A stretch of 64,000 nucleotides of DNA from Thecamonas trahens ATCC 50062 (taxonomy: Eukaryota > Protista > Apusomonadida), in contig NW_013657640.1 of assembly GCF_000142905.1 (NCBI RefSeq), forward strand, positions 274,343 to 338,342, given 5' to 3'. The notes under the pieces were generated by a model. It did no database searches. It was given only the letters and a program-made list of their open reading frames with translations, and was not told the DNA's origin. The position numbers and the translations under genes are program-made. This document shows, piece after piece, positions 22,856 through 31,642 of the stretch; the stretch's first letter is position 1, and each line of letters begins with the position of its first letter.

Positions 22856-25747
22856 TGTCACAAGGTTGAAGAGGAGGCACAGCAGCAGGAAGGAGAAGAA
22901 AGGCAGGAGGAGGAAGGCAAGGTCAAAGACAAGGTCACAGACACAGTCACGGTCAAGGTCGAGTTCAAGGTCGACGGCCAGAGCTCATGCGAGTGGCGCA
23001 AACAACTTGGACAGTCTTGCGAGCACTCGGTCTTTTTCTGTTGCTTCGTCAAGAGCCTCTGCCGCCAAAAGCAGCCGAAAGGCAGCAAAGGGCGCCAAGG
23101 AGGGCAAGGGTGGGAAGAAGGACAAGAAGAAGTCAAAGGCTTCGGCTGCTGCTGCGCCAACGGCGGCAAACACGACGATGACCACGGCGAGTGAGAGATC
23201 AAGATCTCGTTCGAGGTCAAGGTCGACAAGGCCGTCGGGACGGAGGTCGAGAGCCACACGATCCGGCAAGTCAGGCAAGTCGGGCAAGTCGGGCAAGTCG
23301 GGCAAGTCGCGCACGTCGGGCAAGTCGCGCAAGCCGCATAGGTCGGGACGGCGACGGAGGCGGTCGAGGACTGCGTTCACTGGCTCGGCGTCGGTAGCAC
23401 AGTCACCACCGCCGCGACTCGCGCCGGCTCCGCTGCCGGCTCCGCTGCCGTCAGTGTCATCGTCATCGTCTTCATCGCAGTCGCAGTCGCGGCCGCGGTC
23501 GCAGTCGCGGTCGCGGTCGCGGTCGCAGTCGCGGTCGCAGTCGAGCGGGAGCAGCTCTCACTCGGGGTCGGAAGACAGAGCAACGGCGCCAGTCCTCGAG
23601 TCGTTCTCGGATCTCCCGGAGGAGCTCATTGTCTCGCGGAAGGAGCTCAAGGGCAAAAAGGTGGTCGGCTCAGGCTCGTTCGGCAAGGTATACAAGGCGA
23701 CGTTCCGCGGCAAGCCGGTGGCGTACAAGGTGCCCAAGGGGACCAAGGAGGACCTGGCCGACCTCAAGAAGAGGTCATGCTGGTCACCTTCCTCAACCAC
23801 CGCAACATCATCTCGATCTACGGGGTGGTGCAGGACAAGTCGTCGGTCGGGGTGATCATGGAGTACTGCCCGACCGATCTCGAGGCAGCACAGGCCTCGC
23901 TTGCTCCGCTCGCCATCCTCAAGGTTGCACACGGCATCTGCTCCGGCATGGCCTACCTTCACTCGCTCAGGATCATCCACCGTGATCTCAAGTCGGCCAA
24001 CATCCTGCTCGACGTCGACGGTGACGTCCGCATCATCGATTTTGGCCTCTCGCGCCTCCTTCCCTCGCAGCCCGAGGAGATGACGCTCGGCACCGGCTCG
24101 CCGGACTTTATGGCGCCCGAGATGAAGACTGTCTCGCAGCGGATGCGCGACGCCGAGGCTGTCGAGGCCGCGGCCTCGACAGCCTCGGCCGACGAGACCG
24201 GCGAGACCCGTGGCGCGTCGGCGTCGTCGTCGTACTCACCACCGCCGCCGTCGCCGTCGCCCGACGCGCCGCCGTCGCCGCTCCCGGCATCGGCCTCGCA
24301 CTCCTCCGACGCGCACCCGTCGGAGACCGAGCTCACCCCCGTGCCCGACGAGGCGTCCTCGGGCAAAAAGTCGTGGTTCCGCCGCTGGCGCTCGAACAAG
24401 AGCGCGTCGCCAGAGTCGTCAGCGGCGTCGCCCTCGTTTGCCGCCGCCGATCTCCCGCCCAAGGCCGCCACGCCCGATGCGGTCCGGTCAACCACGTCTT
24501 TTCCTGCGCCGCGCATTGTCCGCTCGGCCACAAACTCGTCGTCGTCGCGCGGCAGCGAGTCAGACGCCGGCGGCGGCGGCACCGCCCGCCGTCGTACCCG
24601 CTCGCGCGCTCGCTCGCTGTCAAAGTCCGGTCGGCCCGGCCGTACCCGCTCGAGGTCGCGGACCTCCAAGGGCAACAGGCTCGCACCGCTGGCGGCGGCG
24701 GCGTCAGGCTCGTCGTCGTCGTCGTCACATGCTGGCAAGGCCAACCATGCGTCGCGATCCCGGAGCCGAAAGGCCAAGCAGCGGCGCCCAAGCCGGACCC
24801 ACAAAGGCAAGCGGGCACGCCGCGGCGTCGGCGGCACCGCCTCGGCTTTGTACCCGGGGCACATGCCGGCGGCGCGCCGTGGACACGGCTCGGTCTCATA
24901 CTCGCGTCCGCGGGCCTCGGTCCGCGACCTCCTCAAGCCATCGACAGGCTACGGCCTTGCGGTCGACGTCTACGCCTTTGGCAAAGTGCTGGAGGAGATG
25001 GCCGCGGCAAACCGGTCGGCGCCGCGGGCGCTGCTCAAGATTGCCGAGCGGTGCCTCAACCCCAAGCCCGAGGCACGCCCCTCGTTTGACCGTCTCGAGC
25101 CCATGCTCCTCGCCCTCATCCACAAGATCTCGCCGGCCAACTCACACCCGTCGTTAGCGTCGGCAGACTCGGGCTCGGGCTCGGGCGACGGTCCGCCGTC
25201 GCTCCGCCTTCGCCCCTCGCGCCTCCAGCCAGGCTCCCGCCGCCGCTCCATGTCGCCCTCGGCCGCCAGACGCCACGTCTCGGCCGCCCGCCGTACCCGG
25301 CAGCTCACCGCCATCTCATCGGCGTCGGAGGAGTCGACCTCGTCGCACGCTGCGGCATCGGGCACAAACTCGGGCGCAAACTCGGGCTCGGACTCAGGCT
25401 CGTCGTCGTCGACCGCCATCTCGCCGCCGCGCCCTCTCCACACCATCCGCAAGAAGCGCGCCGCGACCGCGTCGGCCACCACGCTGGCCTCGGTCTCGCG
25501 ATCAGTCTCATCGCGCCGGCCGGTCCCTTCTCGCCGCCGCTCGCGCTCACGATCCAAAGAAGCGACTCCTCCGCCAGACCACGTAGCGACGCGCACGACC
25601 CGGTCACGCTCGACCGCCCGCCGCCGCTCGCAAATCCGCAAGCGCTCGCGCTCAAAGTCCAAGAACTCGCGCTCGCCCGCCCGCTCGCTCGCCGATCTCG
25701 GCTCCGGCTCGATCACGTCCGACTCGTTTGGTTCGGCCACAGGATAA
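22722..25747 (+). CDS. Tyrosine-kinase-like (TKL) protein kinase with long Ser/Arg-rich regions; apparent frameshift near 23772
   Basis: VGSGSFGKVY...VAYK in ORF 22701..23855. HRDLKSAN, DFG, APE, DVYAFG and RPSF in ORF 23777..25747. Adding one G gives LKK-EVMLV and restores the alphaC Glu. Confidence 0.85.
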
Positions 25748-25766
25748 AGACCATCCACCCACGCCG

Positions 25767-26636
25767 CTATGCTTTTACCTTGGGCAGGATCCGCCTCCGG
25801 GCGTTGATGAAGAAGTTGTCGAGCTGCGTCCGGCTCATTCCGGTCGCTGCGCAGAGTTCGGTCTTCTCGTCCTTGGTCGGGTACGGGTGATGAGCGTGCT
25901 CAAAGAGCCACGCCTTGAGCACAGCCTGCGCCGCCGCATACGCATCGCGATCGTCTTTGTCTCCCCGTGCCCGCTCGCCGCGCCCCAACAGCCGCTGCCG
26001 CTTGGATCGGCACTGCCCGAGCTGATCCAACTCAGCTTTGAGCGCCGCGTCGGCCGCCGAGTGCTTCCGCTTGAGCGCCTTTTGCACCGCCTGCATCCGT
26101 GCCGCCATCGACAGCAGGCCCGGGCTCGACTCACCAGTAGCCGCCATCGCCTCGGCCTCAAAGGTGCTAGTGACAGACATTACTATCCGATGCAGCTTCT
26201 CCAGTTCGGCCGCCTGCACCCGCCGCATGGCCACCAGCCGCCACATCATGTCGTCGCCAAAGGTTCCCGGGAGCAGCTCGTCGAGCTGGCGGACGCCCCG
26301 TCGGGCCAGAAAGGCCGCCACCGCTACTCCTGCCGCCAGCGGGCCCTCGCTCGGCGACTCTGTCCATGGCGCGGTCTGGATGAGCTCCATCAGCTCCACC
26401 AGCAGCTCCATCAACGGGTGACCCGCCAGCTCGCTCGCCCGTCCCGCCTCGTCGCCCAGCGCATCCGCCACCTCGGCGAGCGCTTGATCGGCCACGGGCC
26501 TGGCAGCGGCCGAGCTCGTGTCTCGTCCGGCCCTATCTCTGCTCCCACTCGACATAACCGAGGCATGGAAGCAGTGGCGGCTGTCTGTGGCAAGCTCTGG
26601 TGCGACATGGCGCGCGTGTCGCAGCGATCGCGGCAT
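25767..26636 (-). CDS. TALE homeodomain transcription factor, MEIS/PREP/KNOX (MEINOX)-like
   Basis: Homeodomain VLKAWLFEHAHHPYPTKDEKTELCAATGMSRTQLDNFFINARRRIL (PYP loop, I50). LAGHPLMELLVELME resembles MEIS-A and DDMMWRLVAMRRVQAAELEKLH resembles MEIS-B. Confidence 0.9.
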   Translation of the reverse strand: MPRSLRHARHVAPELATDSRHCFHASVMSSGSRDRAGRDTSSAAARPVADQALAEVADALGDEAGRASELAGHPLMELLVELMELIQTAPWTESPSEGPLAAGVAVAAFLARRGVRQLDELLPGTFGDDMMWRLVAMRRVQAAELEKLHRIVMSVTSTFEAEAMAATGESSPGLLSMAARMQAVQKALKRKHSAADAALKAELDQLGQCRSKRQRLLGRGERARGDKDDRDAYAAAQAVLKAWLFEHAHHPYPTKDEKTELCAATGMSRTQLDNFFINARRRILPKVKA

Positions 26637-26775
26637 GGTCGGTCTGGGCAGAGCCGAGTGGCTGCCCCCCCCCCCCCCCCTCCCCCTCCCCCGGCACCGG
26701 GCTAGGATCAATGGCTGACGGGGAGCCCAGACTCGTCTCCAACGTGTGACGCCCGCCTTCTATGCCGCGATCGCT
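26623..26775. promoter_or_regulatory. Putative bidirectional promoter (26637-26761) bounded by a 14-bp inverted repeat ATGCCGCGATCGCT that forms both start codons
   Basis: The reverse complement of 26623..26636 is identical to 26762..26775; a poly-C tract lies in the spacer. Confidence 0.6.
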
Positions 26776-27490
26776 CCGTCCAACACTTGGGTATCTGCCG
26801 CCGTCACTCGGAAGCGAGGTGTACGCCTGTGCCGGGAACGGGCCGTTTGTGGCGACGCAGACGACGCGCGCGTTCCACGCGCCGTCGACAAGCGAGGTCG
26901 AGTCCGAGCCAGAGGCACCGAGTCCAGCTAGCGGTAGCGAGTCGTCCACTGCCGAGCTGGCCTCGTTCGAGGCTGCGATGGGAAGCATGGTGTTTGCAGC
27001 CGGCAGCTTTGCGGCGCTGAGCGCGGCGGCGGAGGAGAACCACGTGGCGGGCATGATGCTGTACTCGACCCGCGGCGCGTACACCCGCGGCATCGAGGTC
27101 ATCCGCCGGCAGTGCGCCGCGGCTGGGGAAGCGCTTGTGGCGATGGAGTCGACCGCGAATGGCCCGCTTCCTGATGCCCTTGTTTCTGGGTGGCACGACA
27201 GGGTGGCTGGCATCCGGCGCGCAGCGGTGGCGCGGCTGGCGTCCGAGAGCCACGCCGCGCTGGCGCGGCTGGACGTCATGGTCGCAAACGGCACGCTCCC
27301 GCCAAACAAGAAGAAACGAACCAACTTTGACGCGCAAGCCCGCAAAGTACTTCGCGAGTGGCGAGCAGCCCACGGCGATCGGCCTGACGAGTCAGCGCGA
27401 AACGAGCTGGCGCGCGCCTCGGGCCTCAGTGCCAAGCAAGTGGCGACGTGGTTCGCCAACGCGCGGTACCGGGCGAGCGGGCATGGATAG
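26762..27490 (+). CDS. PBX/PBC-like homeodomain transcription factor with a shortened TALE loop
   Basis: Homeodomain KKKRTNFDAQARKVLREW...ESARNELARASGLSAKQVATWFANARYR. Upstream LYSTRGAYTRGIEVIRRQC...GPLP...RLASESHAALARL aligns by eye to the PBC-B domain. Confidence 0.85.
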   Translation: MPRSLRPTLGYLPPSLGSEVYACAGNGPFVATQTTRAFHAPSTSEVESEPEAPSPASGSESSTAELASFEAAMGSMVFAAGSFAALSAAAEENHVAGMMLYSTRGAYTRGIEVIRRQCAAAGEALVAMESTANGPLPDALVSGWHDRVAGIRRAAVARLASESHAALARLDVMVANGTLPPNKKKRTNFDAQARKVLREWRAAHGDRPDESARNELARASGLSAKQVATWFANARYRASGHG

Positions 27491-27499
27491 TAGAGTCGT

Positions 27500-30400
27500 T
27501 TACGGCGCAAGGACGGCGCCCGATGGCAGATCTCTGCGGACCTCGCCGGTAGCGGCGTTCTTATAGTACACAACAGCGCCGGCGCCCTTCTTGATCCATA
27601 CGTTGTCGCTGGGCACTGCCGGAGGTTGCGGGTGGTGGGAAGAGGGCGAGGGTGGGCCGTCCGACGCGGGCGGCCCGGCAAGGGCCTCACGCTTGAGCGG
27701 CGACGCCTCGCGGTCGCCCTCGAGGCGGCCGAGCTCGGCCTGCATGTCCCGGTTCGAGGACTCGAGGTGTGCGACCGAGGCGGCGACGCCGCCGTCACGG
27801 ACGGCCTTGATGGAGGCGTCGAGCCGGTCGCCGACGACCTTGAGCTGCGATTCGCCGTGGAGTGCGAGGGCCTCGGCACGCACGACCGACTGCTCGACGC
27901 CGTCGAGCTCAAGCTCGAGCGAGCGAGCGAGGACCGAGCCCTCGTTAGCCTCTTCGCGCGCGAGCCGGAGCTCGTGCTGCAGGAGCGAGATCTCGCCGAC
28001 GAGCTCGACTCGGTCGGCCTGGAGGGCGGCGACCTGGAGCTCGAGCTGAACAACTTCTTGCGAGCGGCGGTCGAGCTTGTTGTGCAAGTCCGAGACGGTC
28101 TGCGCGTGCTCGCGGAGGGTGGCCGACATGGCAGAGGTCGAGTTGCGGTCGGCATCGGCGACGGCGGCTTCAAGCTTGCGCATGGCGTCGGCAGCGGTGG
28201 CGGCCGCACCCTGAGCAGTCTCCTTGGCGGACAGGGCCTCGGCGAGAGCAGAGCGGAGACGAACAGCATCGTCATCGGCGGCGGCGGCGCGCTTGGCGGC
28301 GGCGGCAGCCGAGGCTTCGGCAGCGTCGGCGCGGGCGGTGGCGGCGGCGGCGGTCCGCTTGGCAGCCTCGAGCTGGACCACCAGCTGCATCTTGTCCTTG
28401 CCCGCGGCGAGGGCGGATGCCTGGGCGGCACGGAACTCGTCGTACGACTCCTGCAGCTTTGTGCGGAGCTCCTTGATTTGCTCGTACTGGTTGTTGATCG
28501 CGTCGGCGCCGGCGCCGGCGCGGCCGGAGCTGGCACCCGGCTGGGTGGCTAGGCCGGCCTTGGCCCGCTTGAGCTGCGAAGTTGCCTCGCGGAGGTTACG
28601 CTCAAGGGCCAGCTTCTCACGGTTGAGGCTCTCGACCGAGGCGCGAAGGGTGGCGGCCTCGTTGCGGGCCTTGTTGAGCATGCCTTCGAGCTCAAAGCGA
28701 TCGTCAGCGACGCGGGCAAGGTCGTCGCGGAGGCGGCCCATGTCGGCGGCCATGAGTTCGCGCTCGTACGAGCCGTGCGAGGTGGTCGAGGCCGAGGCCA
28801 GCGACATGCCGTTGAGCTGCGACCGGAGCGAGGAGGCGACAGACTCCAGCTCGACAATCCGGGCCTTGAGCGCGGAGACCGCCTTGCCGTGCTCTTCCTT
28901 GAGAGCGGCGGCTTCGGCGGGCGAGAGTGAGCCGGGCGGGGCCGAATCACCACGGAAGGTGCCGTCGTCGGCACCTCCGCTCGCCATCCGCCACTCGCGG
29001 AGCGACGCCGGCGGGCCGTCAAGACCGCCGGCGCCGGCCTTGCGGGCGACGGTGGCGTACTTTTGCAGCTGACGGACCTCGTCCTGCAGCGCCTCAACCT
29101 CAATCGACTTGGAGCGGATCTGGGCCCGGAGGGTGTGGACAAGGTTGACGAGGCGTGCGCGAGCGGCGTCCGACTCGTTGCCGGCCGGTTCAGACTCGCC
29201 CACCAGGACGTCGGCGAGCGCATCGGTGGCCTCTGTCACCTCGTTACGGGTGAGTGTCAGGTCCTTAGCGAGTTGGCGGATGCGGAGGCGGAGGGCCGCG
29301 TTCTCGGAGCGCAGCGCCTGGAGCGAGGCGACCGAGTCGCCGCCGACCGGCGCCTCGTCGGCAAGCTCCTCCGGGTTTTCGATGCCAGTGGCAGCCTCGA
29401 GGACACGGAGCTTGGCGGAGAGCTCGTCGACGGCGTCGTAGAGTCGGCGATTCTCCTCGCGGAGCGCGACGTTGACGACCTGGAGCTCGCCGTGGAGCGA
29501 GGCCTGCGAGATGACGCGGGCGGTCTGTGAGTCGAGGTTGGCCTGCAACTCGTCGCGCTCGGCGCGCTGGCGAGTCACATCCTTGGACAGCTCGTGGCGG
29601 AGGTAGTCGTTTTGGGTGACGAGGTTGTCGACGCGCGCAGCAAGAGCCTCGTTGGCGAGCGCGGCACGCTGCAGCTCGTCAGACGCGTCCTCGGCGGCCG
29701 AGACAGCGGCAAAGAGCCTGCCGTTCTCCTCGACCAGCCGCTCCAACTGCGGCTCGATCGATTTGGCGTGGGCAACCAAGGCGGCATTGGTCTCGGCCGC
29801 AGCACGGAGCTTGGCCTCGGACGCGGCGGTCTCCTCGAGCGAGGCCGAGAGCTCGGCAACCAGCGCCTTGGCCGACTCGAGTTCGGCTGCTGACTTGGTC
29901 GCGGCGTCCTTGAACGGTGCGAGCTCATCGAGCTGCTCGCGGAGCGAGGATGCGGCGGCTTCGGCGGTATCGGCCCGCCCGTCGGCCTTGGCCACCCGCC
30001 GCTCGAGCGCGGCGACTCGCGCCGAGAGCTCGGCATTGTCGTCGAGGGCGGCGCGGAGCGAGGCGTTGGCCGAGTCGACGGTCGACTTGGCGGCGTCGAG
30101 CGCAGCCTCGAGTGACTCGACCTTGCCGGTGAGCGCCTGCCGCTGCATCTCGGCTTGGGCCGCCGCCGACTGGGCCGCAAGCTGGGCCTCCTGGACTTGG
30201 GCCATGGCATCGAGCTTGGCCTGTTGGGCGGTGGCAGAGAGGTCAGCAATGCGTGCGCGGGCGGCGTCGGCGTCAGCGACGGCGCGGTCGGCAGACTCGC
30301 GGGCGTCGGCCAGCTGGCGCTCGAGCCGGTCGGCCCGTGCAGCGGTGACCGACGCAGCGTCGGCGGCCTCGCGGCACGACGCAAGCTGGTCGAGGACCTC

Positions 30401-31642
30401 GGCCTGCAGCTCGTCCATGGCGGCCGCCTGCTGGCGGGCACTCTCGGCCTCGGCCTCAAGAACCTCAATCCGCTGGGTGGCGGCGCTCGCCTCATTCCGG
30501 GCGGCGTCACTCTGGCCCTCGGCATCACGGAGGAGAGTCTCAAGCTCGGCGACCTGTGCGCGGAGCGCGGCGTTGGCGTCGCGCACGACGTCTACAGAGC
30601 CCGGGGTGTTGGAGGTGCTCGACCCGGACTTGGCCGCGTCCAGTTCGGTCCGCAGCTCTTCCACCTGGCTCAGCAGCTCCTCGGTAAATTCGATGAGCGC
30701 CTCACGCTCCTCGTCGGCCGACGCCGGCGCAGCACCGTCCGGGAGCGAGCTCGGTGCCAGCCGGGCCGTCGACTCGACGTCCAGCACTCTTGCCTTGAGC
30801 GCCTCGTTCTCGGCCGCGAGTTCGGCGGCCTGGACCGCGTGCAGCCCCTTTTGCTCGAGCATCGACTTGAGAACCTTAATGTACGCACGCTGCTCCTCAG
30901 CGACCTGTGCTTCACCGCGGAGATTCTCCAGCAACTCATCACGCTCGGCCTTGAGGCTGCGGATCGCGGCCGAGTCGGCGCGGGTCGCCACTGCAGTACC
31001 TGGGCGAGTCATCTTGTTCGGCTCAGCGTTCTCCGCCCCAGCCGCGAGCTTGGCCTTGAGTGTGTCGCGCTGGACAAAGAGCTTGCGAATGCGAGCGTTG
31101 GCTGCTTTGAGCTCCTTCTCTAGCCGAGCGATGCGGGCATTCGCAGCGCGATTCGACTTTGCACTCGCAGCTGCGCTCGACGCCGGCGTCCGGGCTGTTC
31201 GGGCCGACTTTCCGCCATCGGCATCATCGCCTTCTGCAAGGACCGCAACTGCAAGCGGCATCTGCTTCACATGGGCCTTTTCCACCGGAAGCGGATGGGC
31301 CGGAGCGAGCTGAGCCACTCGCTCCTCAGTCAAAGCCAGCTGGCCACGCAAGGCCGCCACGGTCTTTGTCAGCGAGAGCAAGTCACGCGCCTGTGCTTGA
31401 ACCTTTGCCGCCAGTCGGGCATCCAGGCGCCCGCCTCCAGCACCCGCACCCGCACCAGCACCCGCACCAGCACCAGCACCAGCACCAGCACCCGAGCCAG
31501 TAGCTCCCGTCGGCCCTTGCCGTGTCGTCCATGACCGGCTATGGGAGGTGGCCGACTTGACGGGAGTGGGTGCTCCTGCAGACTGCACAGGGGAAGTAGG
31601 CGCAGTTGGCTCCACAGGCACCCGTGCTCGTGGCACCTCCAT
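27500..31642 (-). CDS. Long coiled-coil protein with a C-terminal WW-like motif
   Basis: 1380-aa Ala/Glu/Leu heptad-rich ORF ending VWIKKGAGAVVYYKNAATGEVRRDLP. Confidence 0.85.
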   Translation of the reverse strand: MEVPRARVPVEPTAPTSPVQSAGAPTPVKSATSHSRSWTTRQGPTGATGSGAGAGAGAGAGAGAGAGAGGGRLDARLAAKVQAQARDLLSLTKTVAALRGQLALTEERVAQLAPAHPLPVEKAHVKQMPLAVAVLAEGDDADGGKSARTARTPASSAAASAKSNRAANARIARLEKELKAANARIRKLFVQRDTLKAKLAAGAENAEPNKMTRPGTAVATRADSAAIRSLKAERDELLENLRGEAQVAEEQRAYIKVLKSMLEQKGLHAVQAAELAAENEALKARVLDVESTARLAPSSLPDGAAPASADEEREALIEFTEELLSQVEELRTELDAAKSGSSTSNTPGSVDVVRDANAALRAQVAELETLLRDAEGQSDAARNEASAATQRIEVLEAEAESARQQAAAMDELQAEVLDQLASCREAADAASVTAARADRLERQLADARESADRAVADADAARARIADLSATAQQAKLDAMAQVQEAQLAAQSAAAQAEMQRQALTGKVESLEAALDAAKSTVDSANASLRAALDDNAELSARVAALERRVAKADGRADTAEAAASSLREQLDELAPFKDAATKSAAELESAKALVAELSASLEETAASEAKLRAAAETNAALVAHAKSIEPQLERLVEENGRLFAAVSAAEDASDELQRAALANEALAARVDNLVTQNDYLRHELSKDVTRQRAERDELQANLDSQTARVISQASLHGELQVVNVALREENRRLYDAVDELSAKLRVLEAATGIENPEELADEAPVGGDSVASLQALRSENAALRLRIRQLAKDLTLTRNEVTEATDALADVLVGESEPAGNESDAARARLVNLVHTLRAQIRSKSIEVEALQDEVRQLQKYATVARKAGAGGLDGPPASLREWRMASGGADDGTFRGDSAPPGSLSPAEAAALKEEHGKAVSALKARIVELESVASSLRSQLNGMSLASASTTSHGSYERELMAADMGRLRDDLARVADDRFELEGMLNKARNEAATLRASVESLNREKLALERNLREATSQLKRAKAGLATQPGASSGRAGAGADAINNQYEQIKELRTKLQESYDEFRAAQASALAAGKDKMQLVVQLEAAKRTAAAATARADAAEASAAAAAKRAAAADDDAVRLRSALAEALSAKETAQGAAATAADAMRKLEAAVADADRNSTSAMSATLREHAQTVSDLHNKLDRRSQEVVQLELQVAALQADRVELVGEISLLQHELRLAREEANEGSVLARSLELELDGVEQSVVRAEALALHGESQLKVVGDRLDASIKAVRDGGVAASVAHLESSNRDMQAELGRLEGDREASPLKREALAGPPASDGPPSPSSHHPQPPAVPSDNVWIKKGAGAVVYYKNAATGEVRRDLPSGAVLAP

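What the first reader, a model, noticed from the sequence alone, without database searches (positions are those of the whole stretch)
25767..27490. Head-to-head MEIS-like and PBX-like homeobox pair: candidate mating-type or zygote-programme locus
Seen: two homeodomain genes are transcribed divergently across a 125-bp spacer. The left has a TALE PYP loop plus MEIS-A/B-like blocks (GHPLMELL; DDMM...ELEKLH). The right has a PBX-like homeodomain N-arm (KRTNFDAQA vs PBX RRNFSKQA) and a PBC-B-like helix region (RGAYTRGIEVIRRQC). Known: MEIS/PREP and PBX heterodimerise through these N-terminal domains in animals; Chlamydomonas GSM1/GSP1 TALE heterodimers trigger the zygote programme; basidiomycete HD1/HD2 mating-type genes are arranged as divergent pairs. 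Inference: this is a co-regulated heterodimer cassette in a unicellular protist, possibly a sex or ploidy-transition locus, and possibly a relic of the ancestral linkage of the two TALE partner classes.
Basis: partly seen in the sequence, partly recalled or inferred. Interest (0 to 1): 0.92.

Follow-up and report, generated by a model that had tools for sequence, protein, structure and literature searches.

The report
Conserved head-to-head homeobox gene pair
Two homeobox transcription-factor genes of the protist Thecamonas trahens sit head to head, 125 bases apart; the same arrangement occurs in a second, distant marine relative, and both genes are missing from published catalogues because the reference annotation cuts out their homeodomains, but a role in mating or as MEIS/PBX partners is not shown.

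Summary
Window 25767-26636(-) and 26762-27490(+) are two intact homeobox ORFs of Thecamonas trahens (AMSG_08426 and AMSG_08427) with start codons 125 bp apart.

- **Left gene.** It is a true TALE homeodomain. Its N-terminal region matches the MEIS/KNOX (MEINOX) domain weakly but collinearly.
- **Right gene.** It is not a PBX. Its loop has one extra residue, not three. It has A50 and Y54. No PBC domain is found by Pfam or by profile comparison. It does not group with PBC homeodomains. It defines a small new subfamily with its own conserved helical N-terminal domain.
- **New: conserved linkage.** An uncultured marine relative (35-39% protein identity) has the same two genes head to head, 111-112 bp apart. 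There the pair is flipped relative to a shared neighbouring gene.
- **New: shared start.** All four proteins begin M-P-x-S-L. In T. trahens the shared 14-mer at both start codons occurs nowhere else in the 28.7-Mb genome.
- **New: misannotation.** Both NCBI gene models splice out the homeodomain, so published homeobox inventories lack the pair.
- **Mating-type reading.** Environmental haplotypes are at least 99% identical and carry both genes, so a hypervariable mating-type locus is not supported.
- **Untested.** Heterodimerisation and expression remain untested. The complex prediction gave no verdict.

The parts
25767..26636 (-). Left gene: TALE homeobox protein, 289 aa from the first ATG (MPRSLRHARH...). 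This is NCBI AMSG_08426, whose 239-aa model starts at Met28 and splices out helices 2-3 of the homeodomain.
   Evidence: ORF; Pfam; NCBI model P0001. The orthologue in species 2 is 35% identical over its full length. Met28 is Val in an environmental haplotype, which argues against the NCBI start.
25776..25964 (-). Left homeodomain (residues 225-287). It has the three-residue PYP loop and helix 3 reads FFINARRR (F48, I50, N51, R53-55).
   Evidence: Homeobox_KN 2.8e-19 over profile positions 1-40 of 40. Best PDB hits are PKNOX1 at 7.3e-14 and MEIS1/2 at about 1e-12.
26175..26438 (-). Left MEINOX-like region (residues 67-154): GHPLMELLVEL (MEIS-A-like) through DDMMWRLVAMRRVQAAELEKLHRIV (MEIS-B-like).
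   Evidence: BLASTP to the N-terminus of MEIS protein P0002, E=1e-4. hhalign on the N-terminus only, P=7.9e-4 over 87 columns. Pfam Meis_PKNOX_N E=0.17, below its cut-off. The blocks are conserved in the species-2 orthologue. The protein-atlas feature search of residues 44-216 gave PBC and MEIS N-terminal clusters as its nearest named sets (0.76-0.84), which is a lead only.
26637..26761 (.). 125-bp spacer between the two start codons, a presumed bidirectional promoter. It includes a 28-nt C-rich tract at 26665-26692.
   Evidence: The species-2 spacer is 111-112 bp and is also pyrimidine-rich just upstream of the right gene. All assemblies of environmental strains break at the C tract.
26620..26636 (-). 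Left arm of the 17-nt inverted repeat (16 of 17 bases complementary). It covers the left start codon and codons 2-6 (MPRSLR).
   Evidence: the repeat finder pair I1. The 14-mer ATGCCGCGATCGCT occurs only twice in the window and only twice in the whole genome.
26762..26778 (+). Right arm of the inverted repeat. It covers the right start codon and codons 2-6 (MPRSLR).
   Evidence: The first ATG of both species-2 orthologues gives MPLSLY and MPWSLH. Only these 2 of 287 ORFs of 100 aa or more in about 125 kb of T. trahens DNA start with MP.SL.
26762..27490 (+). Right gene: atypical homeobox protein of 242 aa. This is NCBI AMSG_08427, whose 172-aa model splices out the homeodomain.
   Evidence: ORF; Pfam; NCBI model P0154. 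Orthologues P0011 and P0156 are 39% identical. dN/dS is 0.09 between the two species-2 lineages.
26948..27301 (+). Conserved helical N-terminal domain of the right family (residues 63-180). No family could be assigned.
   Evidence: Conserved with P0011. AlphaFold2 predicts helices 60-74, 83-92, 94-131 and 138-176 at pLDDT about 80. There is no Pfam hit, no PBC or MEIS profile similarity and no atlas hit.
27305..27487 (+). Right homeodomain (residues 182-242). The loop between helices 1 and 2 is one residue longer than typical (HGDRP in place of the PYP loop). Helix 3 reads WFANARYR (A50, N51, R53, Y54).
   Evidence: Sequence; HMM-guided alignment. The orthologues keep HGNRP and YFANARYR. Foldseek matches only homeodomains, with Exd/PBX on top.
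27500..31642 (-). Neighbouring coiled-coil gene. It serves as a marker for the flip of the pair.
   Evidence: Its orthologue (49% identity over 598 aa) abuts the 3' end of the LEFT orthologue on L023. In the window it abuts the 3' end of the RIGHT gene.

Best explanation
This is a conserved two-gene cassette in apusomonads. A MEINOX-type TALE homeobox gene and a TALE-derived atypical homeobox gene (a new subfamily with a one-residue loop, A50/Y54 and its own helical N-terminal domain) are transcribed outward from one 111-125-bp bidirectional control region.

Shown:
- Both are real genes under purifying selection.
- The head-to-head arrangement survives in a distant relative despite rearranged flanks.
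- Both proteins in both species begin M-P-x-S-L.

Inferred:
- The shared promoter co-expresses the two proteins.
- They pair through their helical N-terminal domains into a heterodimeric transcription factor with two DNA-reading heads of different specificity (I50 and A50), as MEIS-PBX, KNOX-BELL and fungal HD1-HD2 pairs do.
- The shared N-terminal peptide puts both partners under a common post-translational control.
- The likely biological role is a switch of cell state or life-cycle stage. The data do not say which.
For: - Pair and domains.
- These are the only adjacent two of the 9 homeobox loci in the genome.
- Orthologous pair on metagenome contigs L023 and L024: a 299-300-aa TALE on the minus strand next to a 189/260-aa atypical homeobox gene on the plus strand.
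- The pair is flipped relative to the coiled-coil neighbour. Rpn13, the other neighbour in species 2, lies on another contig in T. trahens.
- dN/dS of the right gene is 0.09.
- MP.SL starts in all four genes, against 2 of 287 background ORFs.
- The start-codon 14-mer is unique in the genome.
- MEINOX-like N-terminus of the left gene.
- Confident helical N-terminal domain of the right gene.
- From established knowledge: TALE proteins commonly act as heterodimers through domains N-terminal to the homeodomain (Joo et al. 2018, PMC6219170).
Against: - There is no evidence of interaction. Complex prediction scored 0.00, which counts as no verdict.
- There is no expression data.
- The right N-terminal domain matches neither PBC, nor MEINOX, nor the left N-terminus (P=0.12-0.72). 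A partner-type domain is therefore assumed, not shown.
- Some local gene order is conserved between the two species anyway, since the coiled-coil gene is still a neighbour. A 111-125-bp spacer is also a small target for breakpoints. Retained adjacency alone is therefore weak evidence of coupling.
- The linkage is documented in only two species.
Confidence: 0.5

Rival explanations
1. The two are independent transcription factors that merely share a bidirectional promoter. They are co-regulated neighbours, possibly old inverted duplicates, that bind DNA separately or with other partners and do not heterodimerise.
For: - No similarity was detected between the right N-terminus and any known TALE dimerisation domain.
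- The complex prediction gave no support.
- Microsynteny with the coiled-coil gene shows that adjacency can persist without functional coupling.
- T. trahens has five other TALE genes that could serve as partners.
Against: - Two of only 9 homeobox genes being immediate neighbours is unlikely by chance, at about 0.006.
- The pair stayed intact through an inversion.
- Both proteins share the conserved MP.SL start in both species.
- Known TALE biology favours dimers (PMC6219170).
Confidence: 0.3
2. This is a mating-type or self-incompatibility locus of the basidiomycete HD1/HD2 kind. Many alleles exist, and proteins from one haplotype cannot pair with each other but pair with those of another haplotype after cell fusion.
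For: - The gene order matches: a TALE gene and a non-TALE-length homeobox gene, divergently transcribed across a short spacer.
- Polymorphism is modestly enriched in the pair relative to its flanks. In run X6 the counts are 8 SNPs in about 1232 bp against 3 in about 2334 bp (Fisher P=0.011). In run X7 they are 6 in 1248 bp against 1 in 1756 bp (P=0.023). The two runs largely share one haplotype.
Against: - All sampled haplotypes are at least 99% identical in both genes: the reference, three metagenome runs and three ENA contigs.
- The right gene carries only 3 amino-acid changes, and these lie in the second half of its N-terminal domain (codons 137, 139 and 152), not in a hypervariable N-terminus.
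- No divergent allele was found at 80% likeness.
- dN/dS is 0.09 between species-2 lineages.
- An apparent pair-less joint (25186 to 27901) is another locus on contig C3.
- To my knowledge no sexual cycle has been described for apusomonads.
Confidence: 0.07
3. These are direct orthologues of animal MEIS and PBX that keep an ancestral chromosomal linkage of the two TALE partner classes.
For: - The left gene is MEINOX-like.
- PBX/Exd are the best PDB matches of the right homeodomain.
- Nine of the 133 nearest homeodomain relatives carry a PBC domain, and no other TALE class domain appears among the 25 families listed for them.
- The two long helices before the homeodomain recall the layout of PBC-B. 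That comparison rests plus my own reading of the PBX sequence.
Against: - The PBC domain was not detected by Pfam or by profile comparison.
- The loop has one extra residue, not three. Position 50 is A, not G.
- The homeodomain tree puts the right family outside the well-supported PBC clade (SH-aLRT 99).
- The closest homeodomain is the in-genome TALE on C52.
Confidence: 0.1

Closest known systems
Basidiomycete HD1/HD2 mating-type gene pairs (for example Ustilago bE/bW and the Coprinopsis A locus)
   Same: Two homeobox genes of different classes are divergently transcribed from a short shared spacer. One has the TALE loop and the other does not. The products of such pairs form heterodimers. 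This comparison rests on established knowledge, not on a test here.
   Different: Multiallelic hypervariability, the defining feature of those loci, is not seen here: haplotypes are at least 99% identical. No sexual cycle is known for the organism. The non-TALE member is TALE-derived with a one-residue loop rather than a canonical 60-residue homeodomain. No sequence relationship to fungal HD1/HD2 was tested.
Animal MEIS/PREP-PBX and plant or algal KNOX-BELL (GSM1-GSP1) TALE heterodimers
   Same: The left gene has a TALE homeodomain of the MEIS/KNOX type (I50, RRR) and a weak but collinear MEINOX-like N-terminal domain. The right gene has a helical domain directly upstream of its homeodomain.
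   Different: In those systems both partners are true TALEs and the genes are unlinked. Here the partner candidate lacks PBC, BELL or PBL similarity and the three-residue loop, and the two genes are adjacent.
Thecamonas trahens TALE genes catalogued by Joo et al. 2018 (KNC56447 'MEIS', KNC53968, KNC47849, KNC48124)
   Same: They come from the same genome and the same superclass. KNC53968 (contig C52) has the homeodomain most like that of the right gene (45% identity).
   Different: Neither gene of this pair is among the six homeobox proteins in that paper's table, because the NCBI models lack the homeodomains. None of the other TALE genes gives a Pfam MEINOX or PBC match either.

Membership tests
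TALE homeobox superclass (left gene) | Three extra residues between helices 1 and 2 (P-Y-P at positions 24-26) | tested here: met
   HHPYP loop. Homeobox_KN 69.1 bits against a cut-off of 24, matching profile positions 1-40 of 40. Alignment.
MEINOX class (MEIS/PREP/KNOX) (left gene) | N-terminal MEIS-A/B (KNOX1/2) bipartite domain recognised by the family profile | tested here: inconclusive
   Pfam Meis_PKNOX_N gives 12.8 bits against a cut-off of 27 (E=0.17) and no hit for the species-2 orthologue. BLASTP of the N-terminus to a MEIS protein gives 1e-4. A two-species N-terminal profile against the MEIS N-terminus gives P=7.9e-4, collinear over 87 columns.
MEINOX class (left gene) | Homeodomain of the MEIS/KNOX type (I50, WFINARRR) | tested here: met
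   FFINARRR in T. trahens and WFINARRR in species 2. Best PDB hits are PKNOX1 and MEIS.
TALE homeobox superclass (right gene) | Three-residue loop extension | tested here: not met
   The loop is two residues shorter than in TALE proteins and one longer than typical (HGDRP). The orthologues show the same. The Homeobox_KN profile still scores above its cut-off (34.3 bits, and 44 bits for the orthologue), so the gene is TALE-derived.
PBC class (PBX/Exd) (right gene) | PBC-A/PBC-B domain N-terminal to the homeodomain | tested here: not met
   No PF03792 hit at E<=1 and none in a six-frame search of the genome. hhalign against a six-sequence PBC N-terminal profile gives P=0.12-0.15. phmmer gains at most about 7 bits upstream of the homeodomain, and with only one PBX protein.
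PBC class (right gene) | PBC-type homeodomain (G50, LNEYFYSHLSNPYP) that groups with the PBC clade | tested here: not met
   Position 50 is A and position 54 is Y. In the tree PBC is one clade (SH-aLRT 99), the right family is a separate clade (86), and its nearest rows are not PBC proteins.
Basidiomycete-type HD1/HD2 mating-type locus | Divergent pair of a TALE-type and a non-TALE homeobox gene | tested here: met
   The arrangement is conserved in species 2.
Basidiomycete-type HD1/HD2 mating-type locus | Many highly divergent alleles, especially in the N-terminal specificity domains | tested here: not met
   The reference, three ENA contigs and three metagenome runs are at least 99% identical. 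There are 3 amino-acid changes in the right gene and 2 well-supported ones in the left, plus one doubtful low-depth change. No divergent allele was found at 80% likeness. The sample is small.
Basidiomycete-type HD1/HD2 mating-type locus | Heterodimer forms only between products of different alleles and triggers post-fusion development | not testable with these tools
   This needs isolates, crosses and binding assays.
Heterodimeric homeodomain partners in general | Physical interaction of the two proteins | tested here: inconclusive
   Complex prediction on left residues 44-216 and right residues 60-182 returned 'no answer', score 0.00, with an uncertain fold for the partner.

The most novel reading that the evidence does not exclude
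The cassette is the apusomonad zygote or ploidy-switch heterodimer. Its divergent 'TALE plus short-loop homeobox' layout would then share an origin with the fungal HD1/HD2 mating-type arrangement. That would date the linked homeodomain-pair design to before the split of Apusomonadida and Opisthokonta, and it would imply a cryptic sexual cycle in apusomonads. The shared MP-x-S-L N-terminus would be a common stability switch, for example an N-terminal proline degron exposed after methionine removal.
Probability: 0.1. Interest if true: 0.9.

Novelty: new variant of a known kind. Interest (0 to 1): 0.6.

Why it matters
Apusomonads are the closest living relatives of animals plus fungi. How paired homeodomain proteins came to control the haploid-to-diploid switch is an open question across eukaryotes.

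This locus offers a concrete, previously hidden candidate. Both reference gene models lack their homeodomains, so the pair is absent from published inventories. It is a conserved, physically linked pair of a MEINOX-type TALE gene and a new short-loop homeobox subfamily.

It can be tested directly for binding, co-expression and life-stage specificity in a culturable protist. It also corrects the homeobox count for T. trahens: I find 9 loci, against 6 listed by Joo et al. 2018. If the two proteins do not interact, it remains a clean example of a conserved bidirectional transcription-factor gene pair with an unexplained shared N-terminal peptide.

Tried and rejected
- **Complex prediction** on the two N-terminal domains: 'no answer' (0.00). 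This counts neither for nor against binding.
- **Protein atlas** on the right N-terminus: no usable hit.
- **Foldseek against the PDB** with the right model: only homeodomain matches. No PBC or MEINOX N-terminal domain is solved, so folds could not be compared.
- **Word-indexed protein searches**: the profile search with the right-family alignment found no further right-family members, and the left-gene search found only homeodomain-level relatives and missed its 35%-identical species-2 orthologue. The exhaustive representative search, run with the right gene only, found just two clusters of the right family among 1.84 billion representatives.
- **JGI metagenome scans.** The scan with the right-family profile found nothing. 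The scan with the left-family profile returned 80 generic TALE loci; none has a divergent second homeobox gene or an N-terminal match.
- **Contigs of P0003 and P0063**, which are TALE proteins with similar homeodomains: no partner gene nearby.
- **hhalign of the left N-terminus against the right N-terminus**: P=0.72, so no sign that the two N-terminal domains are paralogous.
- **A read 'joint' from 25186 to 27901** that would delete the pair: its 40 inserted letters map to contig C3, so it is another locus with 20-nt chance matches.
- **GID4 (PF09783) in the genome**, to back the proline-degron idea: no match, and the control search rang nowhere, so this is uninformative.
- **RNA evidence**: no run on record as RNA holds the locus. 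Only Logan contigs were available, so expression, transcript ends and the reality of the NCBI introns could not be read.

Full report
**Where the window comes from.** The left ORF matches 'uncharacterized protein AMSG_08426 [Thecamonas trahens ATCC 50062]' at 99% identity. The window is contig C40:274343-338342 of a 28.7-Mb, 131-contig assembly. T. trahens is an apusomonad. From general knowledge, apusomonads are the sister group of Opisthokonta.

**The observation.**
- ORF listing and sequence show two uninterrupted ORFs on opposite strands.
- The left ORF runs from 26636 down to 25767 and gives 289 aa from its first ATG.
- The right ORF runs from 26762 to 27490 and gives 242 aa.
- The start codons are 125 bp apart.

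**Left gene: homeodomain.**
- Pfam gives Homeobox_KN at 2.8e-19.
- It has the P-Y-P three-residue loop.
- Its best solved relatives are the PKNOX1 and MEIS homeodomains (7e-14 to 1e-12).

**Right gene: homeodomain.**
- Pfam gives Homeodomain at 4.9e-9 and Homeobox_KN at 2.1e-8.
- Its best solved relatives are PBX1 and Exd (1.9e-8).

**Genome context.** A six-frame scan of the whole genome finds nine homeobox loci. These two are the only ones on the same contig. By chance that is expected about 0.6% of the time.

**Left gene: N-terminus.**
BLASTP gives 1e-4 for residues 47-152.
- A two-species profile of the N-terminus alone, without the homeodomain, matches the MEIS N-terminus at P=7.9e-4 over 87 columns.
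- The Pfam family model stays below its threshold (12.8 bits against 27) and misses the orthologue.
- A language-model feature search of residues 44-216 returned PBC and MEIS N-terminal clusters as its nearest named sets, at scores that count as a lead only.
- I read the left gene as a probable, divergent MEINOX-type TALE.

**Right gene: not a PBX.**
- Its loop between helices 1 and 2 (HGDRP) is one residue longer than in a typical homeodomain and two shorter than in TALE proteins.
- Helix 3 reads WFANARYR, with A50 and Y54.
- All 133 scanned nearest relatives are TALE proteins. Nine of them carry a PBC domain.
- In a homeodomain tree the PBC proteins form one clade (SH-aLRT 99). The right family forms its own clade (86), and its nearest rows are not PBC proteins.
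- The most similar homeodomain is the T. trahens TALE on contig C52 (45% identity, 2e-10).
- Upstream of the homeodomain, Pfam finds no PBC match (genome-wide).
- Profile comparison with a PBC N-terminal alignment gives P=0.12-0.15.
- The long phmmer alignment to one PBX protein adds only about 7 bits over the homeodomain alone.
- AlphaFold2 with a three-sequence alignment predicts a confident helical domain at residues 60-176, with two helices of about 38 residues leading into the homeodomain. That layout recalls PBC-B but is generic.
- No PBC or MEINOX N-terminal structure exists in the PDB for a fold comparison.

**New finding 1: both reference gene models are broken.**
- NCBI's AMSG_08426 (239 aa) starts at Met28 and ends '...HHPSTTSSSTPGGGSCPR'. 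A predicted intron removes helices 2-3 of the homeodomain.
- AMSG_08427 (172 aa) ends '...ARLATSRVASSPRRSA'. Its predicted intron removes the homeodomain.
- The uninterrupted ORFs encode complete homeodomains that are conserved in another species.
- Met28 is Val in an environmental haplotype.
- This explains why the table of Joo et al. 2018 (PMC6219170) lists six T. trahens homeobox proteins and neither of these two.

**New finding 2: the pair is conserved.**
- The exhaustive representative search with the right protein found one true relative, P0011 (189 aa, 4e-27). It is aligned from residue 66 to the end and has the same HG-x-RP loop and FANARYR helix.
- Its near-identical cluster mate P0156 lies on two marine-metagenome contigs, L023 (4019 bp) and L024 (3331 bp).
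- On both contigs a 299-300-aa TALE gene sits directly upstream on the opposite strand.
- That TALE protein is 35% identical to the left protein over its whole length. The conserved blocks are HPL-E--VEL, PW, MM---V----Q--ELE-L-RIV and LKR--S----AL, plus the homeodomain.
- The neighbouring coiled-coil gene is also orthologous (49% identity over 598 aa). On L023 it abuts the 3' end of the left orthologue. In the window it abuts the 3' end of the right gene.
- Rpn13, the other neighbour in species 2, lies on contig C71 in T. trahens.
- The cassette has therefore been flipped and has changed one flank while staying intact.
- A third lineage (L017, 88% nucleotide identity to L024) carries the right gene on a contig too short to show its neighbour.
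- Between these two lineages the right gene has dN/dS=0.09. It is a constrained coding gene.

**New finding 3: a shared start.**
- In T. trahens both genes begin with the same 14 bases, ATGCCGCGATCGCT (MPRSLR). These form a 17-nt inverted repeat.
- The 14-mer occurs nowhere else in the window or in the 28.7-Mb genome.
- In species 2 the first in-frame ATG of the left ORF gives MPLSLY and that of the right ORF gives MPWSLH. The spacer between those ATGs is 111-112 bp.
- Among 287 first-ATG ORFs of at least 100 aa in about 125 kb of T. trahens DNA, only these two start with MP.SL.
- The Ser and Leu codons differ at synonymous positions among the four genes (TCG or TCC; CTG or CTC). This points to selection on the peptide.
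- What the peptide does is unknown. One idea is that an N-terminal proline, exposed after methionine removal, serves as a common stability signal. That rests on my own knowledge of Pro/N-degrons. A search for GID4 in the genome was uninformative.

**The mating-type reading.**
- Three ENA contigs and three metagenome runs (estuary and marine) carry this locus.
- The reference and these haplotypes differ at 5-6 sites in the right gene: P137S, A139G, R152Q and three synonymous changes.
- They differ at two well-supported sites in the left gene: M28V and T259A.
- SNP density is modestly higher in the pair than in its flanks (Fisher P=0.011 for X6 and 0.023 for X7; the two runs largely share one haplotype). 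Even so, the alleles are at least 99% identical.
- Both genes are present wherever coverage allows, and no divergent allele was laid at 80% likeness.
- An apparent joint that would skip the pair belongs to a locus on contig C3.
- This does not fit a multiallelic HD1/HD2-type locus, although the sample is small.

**Interaction and expression.**
- The single complex prediction returned 'no answer' and is not used as evidence.
- No RNA run was found.
- The laid runs were contigs only.

**Verdict.**
- The locus is a real, conserved, previously mis-annotated head-to-head pair of a MEINOX-like TALE gene and a new TALE-derived short-loop homeobox subfamily. Both proteins carry a shared N-terminal peptide.
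- The most likely mechanism is co-expression from the shared spacer followed by heterodimerisation through the N-terminal helical domains. This is inferred by analogy, and I put it at about 0.5.
- The PBX identity of the right gene and the mating-type reading are not supported.
- The resemblance to the fungal HD1/HD2 layout in the sister lineage of Opisthokonta is the most interesting open reading, and it is untested.

Noticed in passing
L029:6001-6477 (also L030, L031); protein P0024: A 158-aa protein with two tandem Homeobox_KN/Homeodomain matches lies on a clearly bacterial 90-kb metagenome scaffold, between flagellar export genes (FliO, FliP, Bac_export_1-3), response regulators and an OEP gene. 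Several other hits of the right-gene search also carry bacterial HTH Pfam matches (YdaS_toxin in 13, HTH_26 in 7, HTH_3 in 6). TALE-like homeodomains therefore appear to be encoded in some bacteria.
   Followed up: no
L022:3118-3732 (G000:C19, about 338.1-338.7 kb): A small (205 aa) TALE homeobox ORF is not in the six-gene T. trahens list of Joo et al. 2018. Helices 1-2 resemble the left gene (45% identity) and helix 3 reads YLANRRYR, which recalls the right gene's FANARYR. Its N-terminus has no detectable similarity to either gene.
   Followed up: partly
L020:3085-4938 (G000:C52): The open frame around the TALE gene KNC53968 is 618 aa with the homeodomain at residues 251-290. The published 412-aa protein starts just before the homeodomain. 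The annotated start may be too far downstream.
   Followed up: no
proteins P0012, P0015, P0014, P0025: The strongest non-orthologous hits of the right homeodomain are proteins with 6-10 tandem homeodomains, from Logan or ENA assemblies of unknown organisms.
   Followed up: no
window 26665-26692: A 28-nt C-rich tract (C16 T C5 T C5) lies in the spacer. Every independent assembly of environmental strains breaks at it, so the spacer has not been resequenced in any of them.
   Followed up: partly
L014:about 1590-1766: ENA contig ERZ505273 NODE_15354 matches the window exactly for about 1590 bp and then continues in unrelated sequence. It is probably a chimeric assembly end at a GC-rich repeat in the coiled-coil gene.
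   Followed up: no
window 23777-25747: The gene to the left of the pair is a protein kinase interrupted by a long Ser/Arg/Pro-rich insert. It is not a neighbour of the pair in species 2.
   Followed up: no
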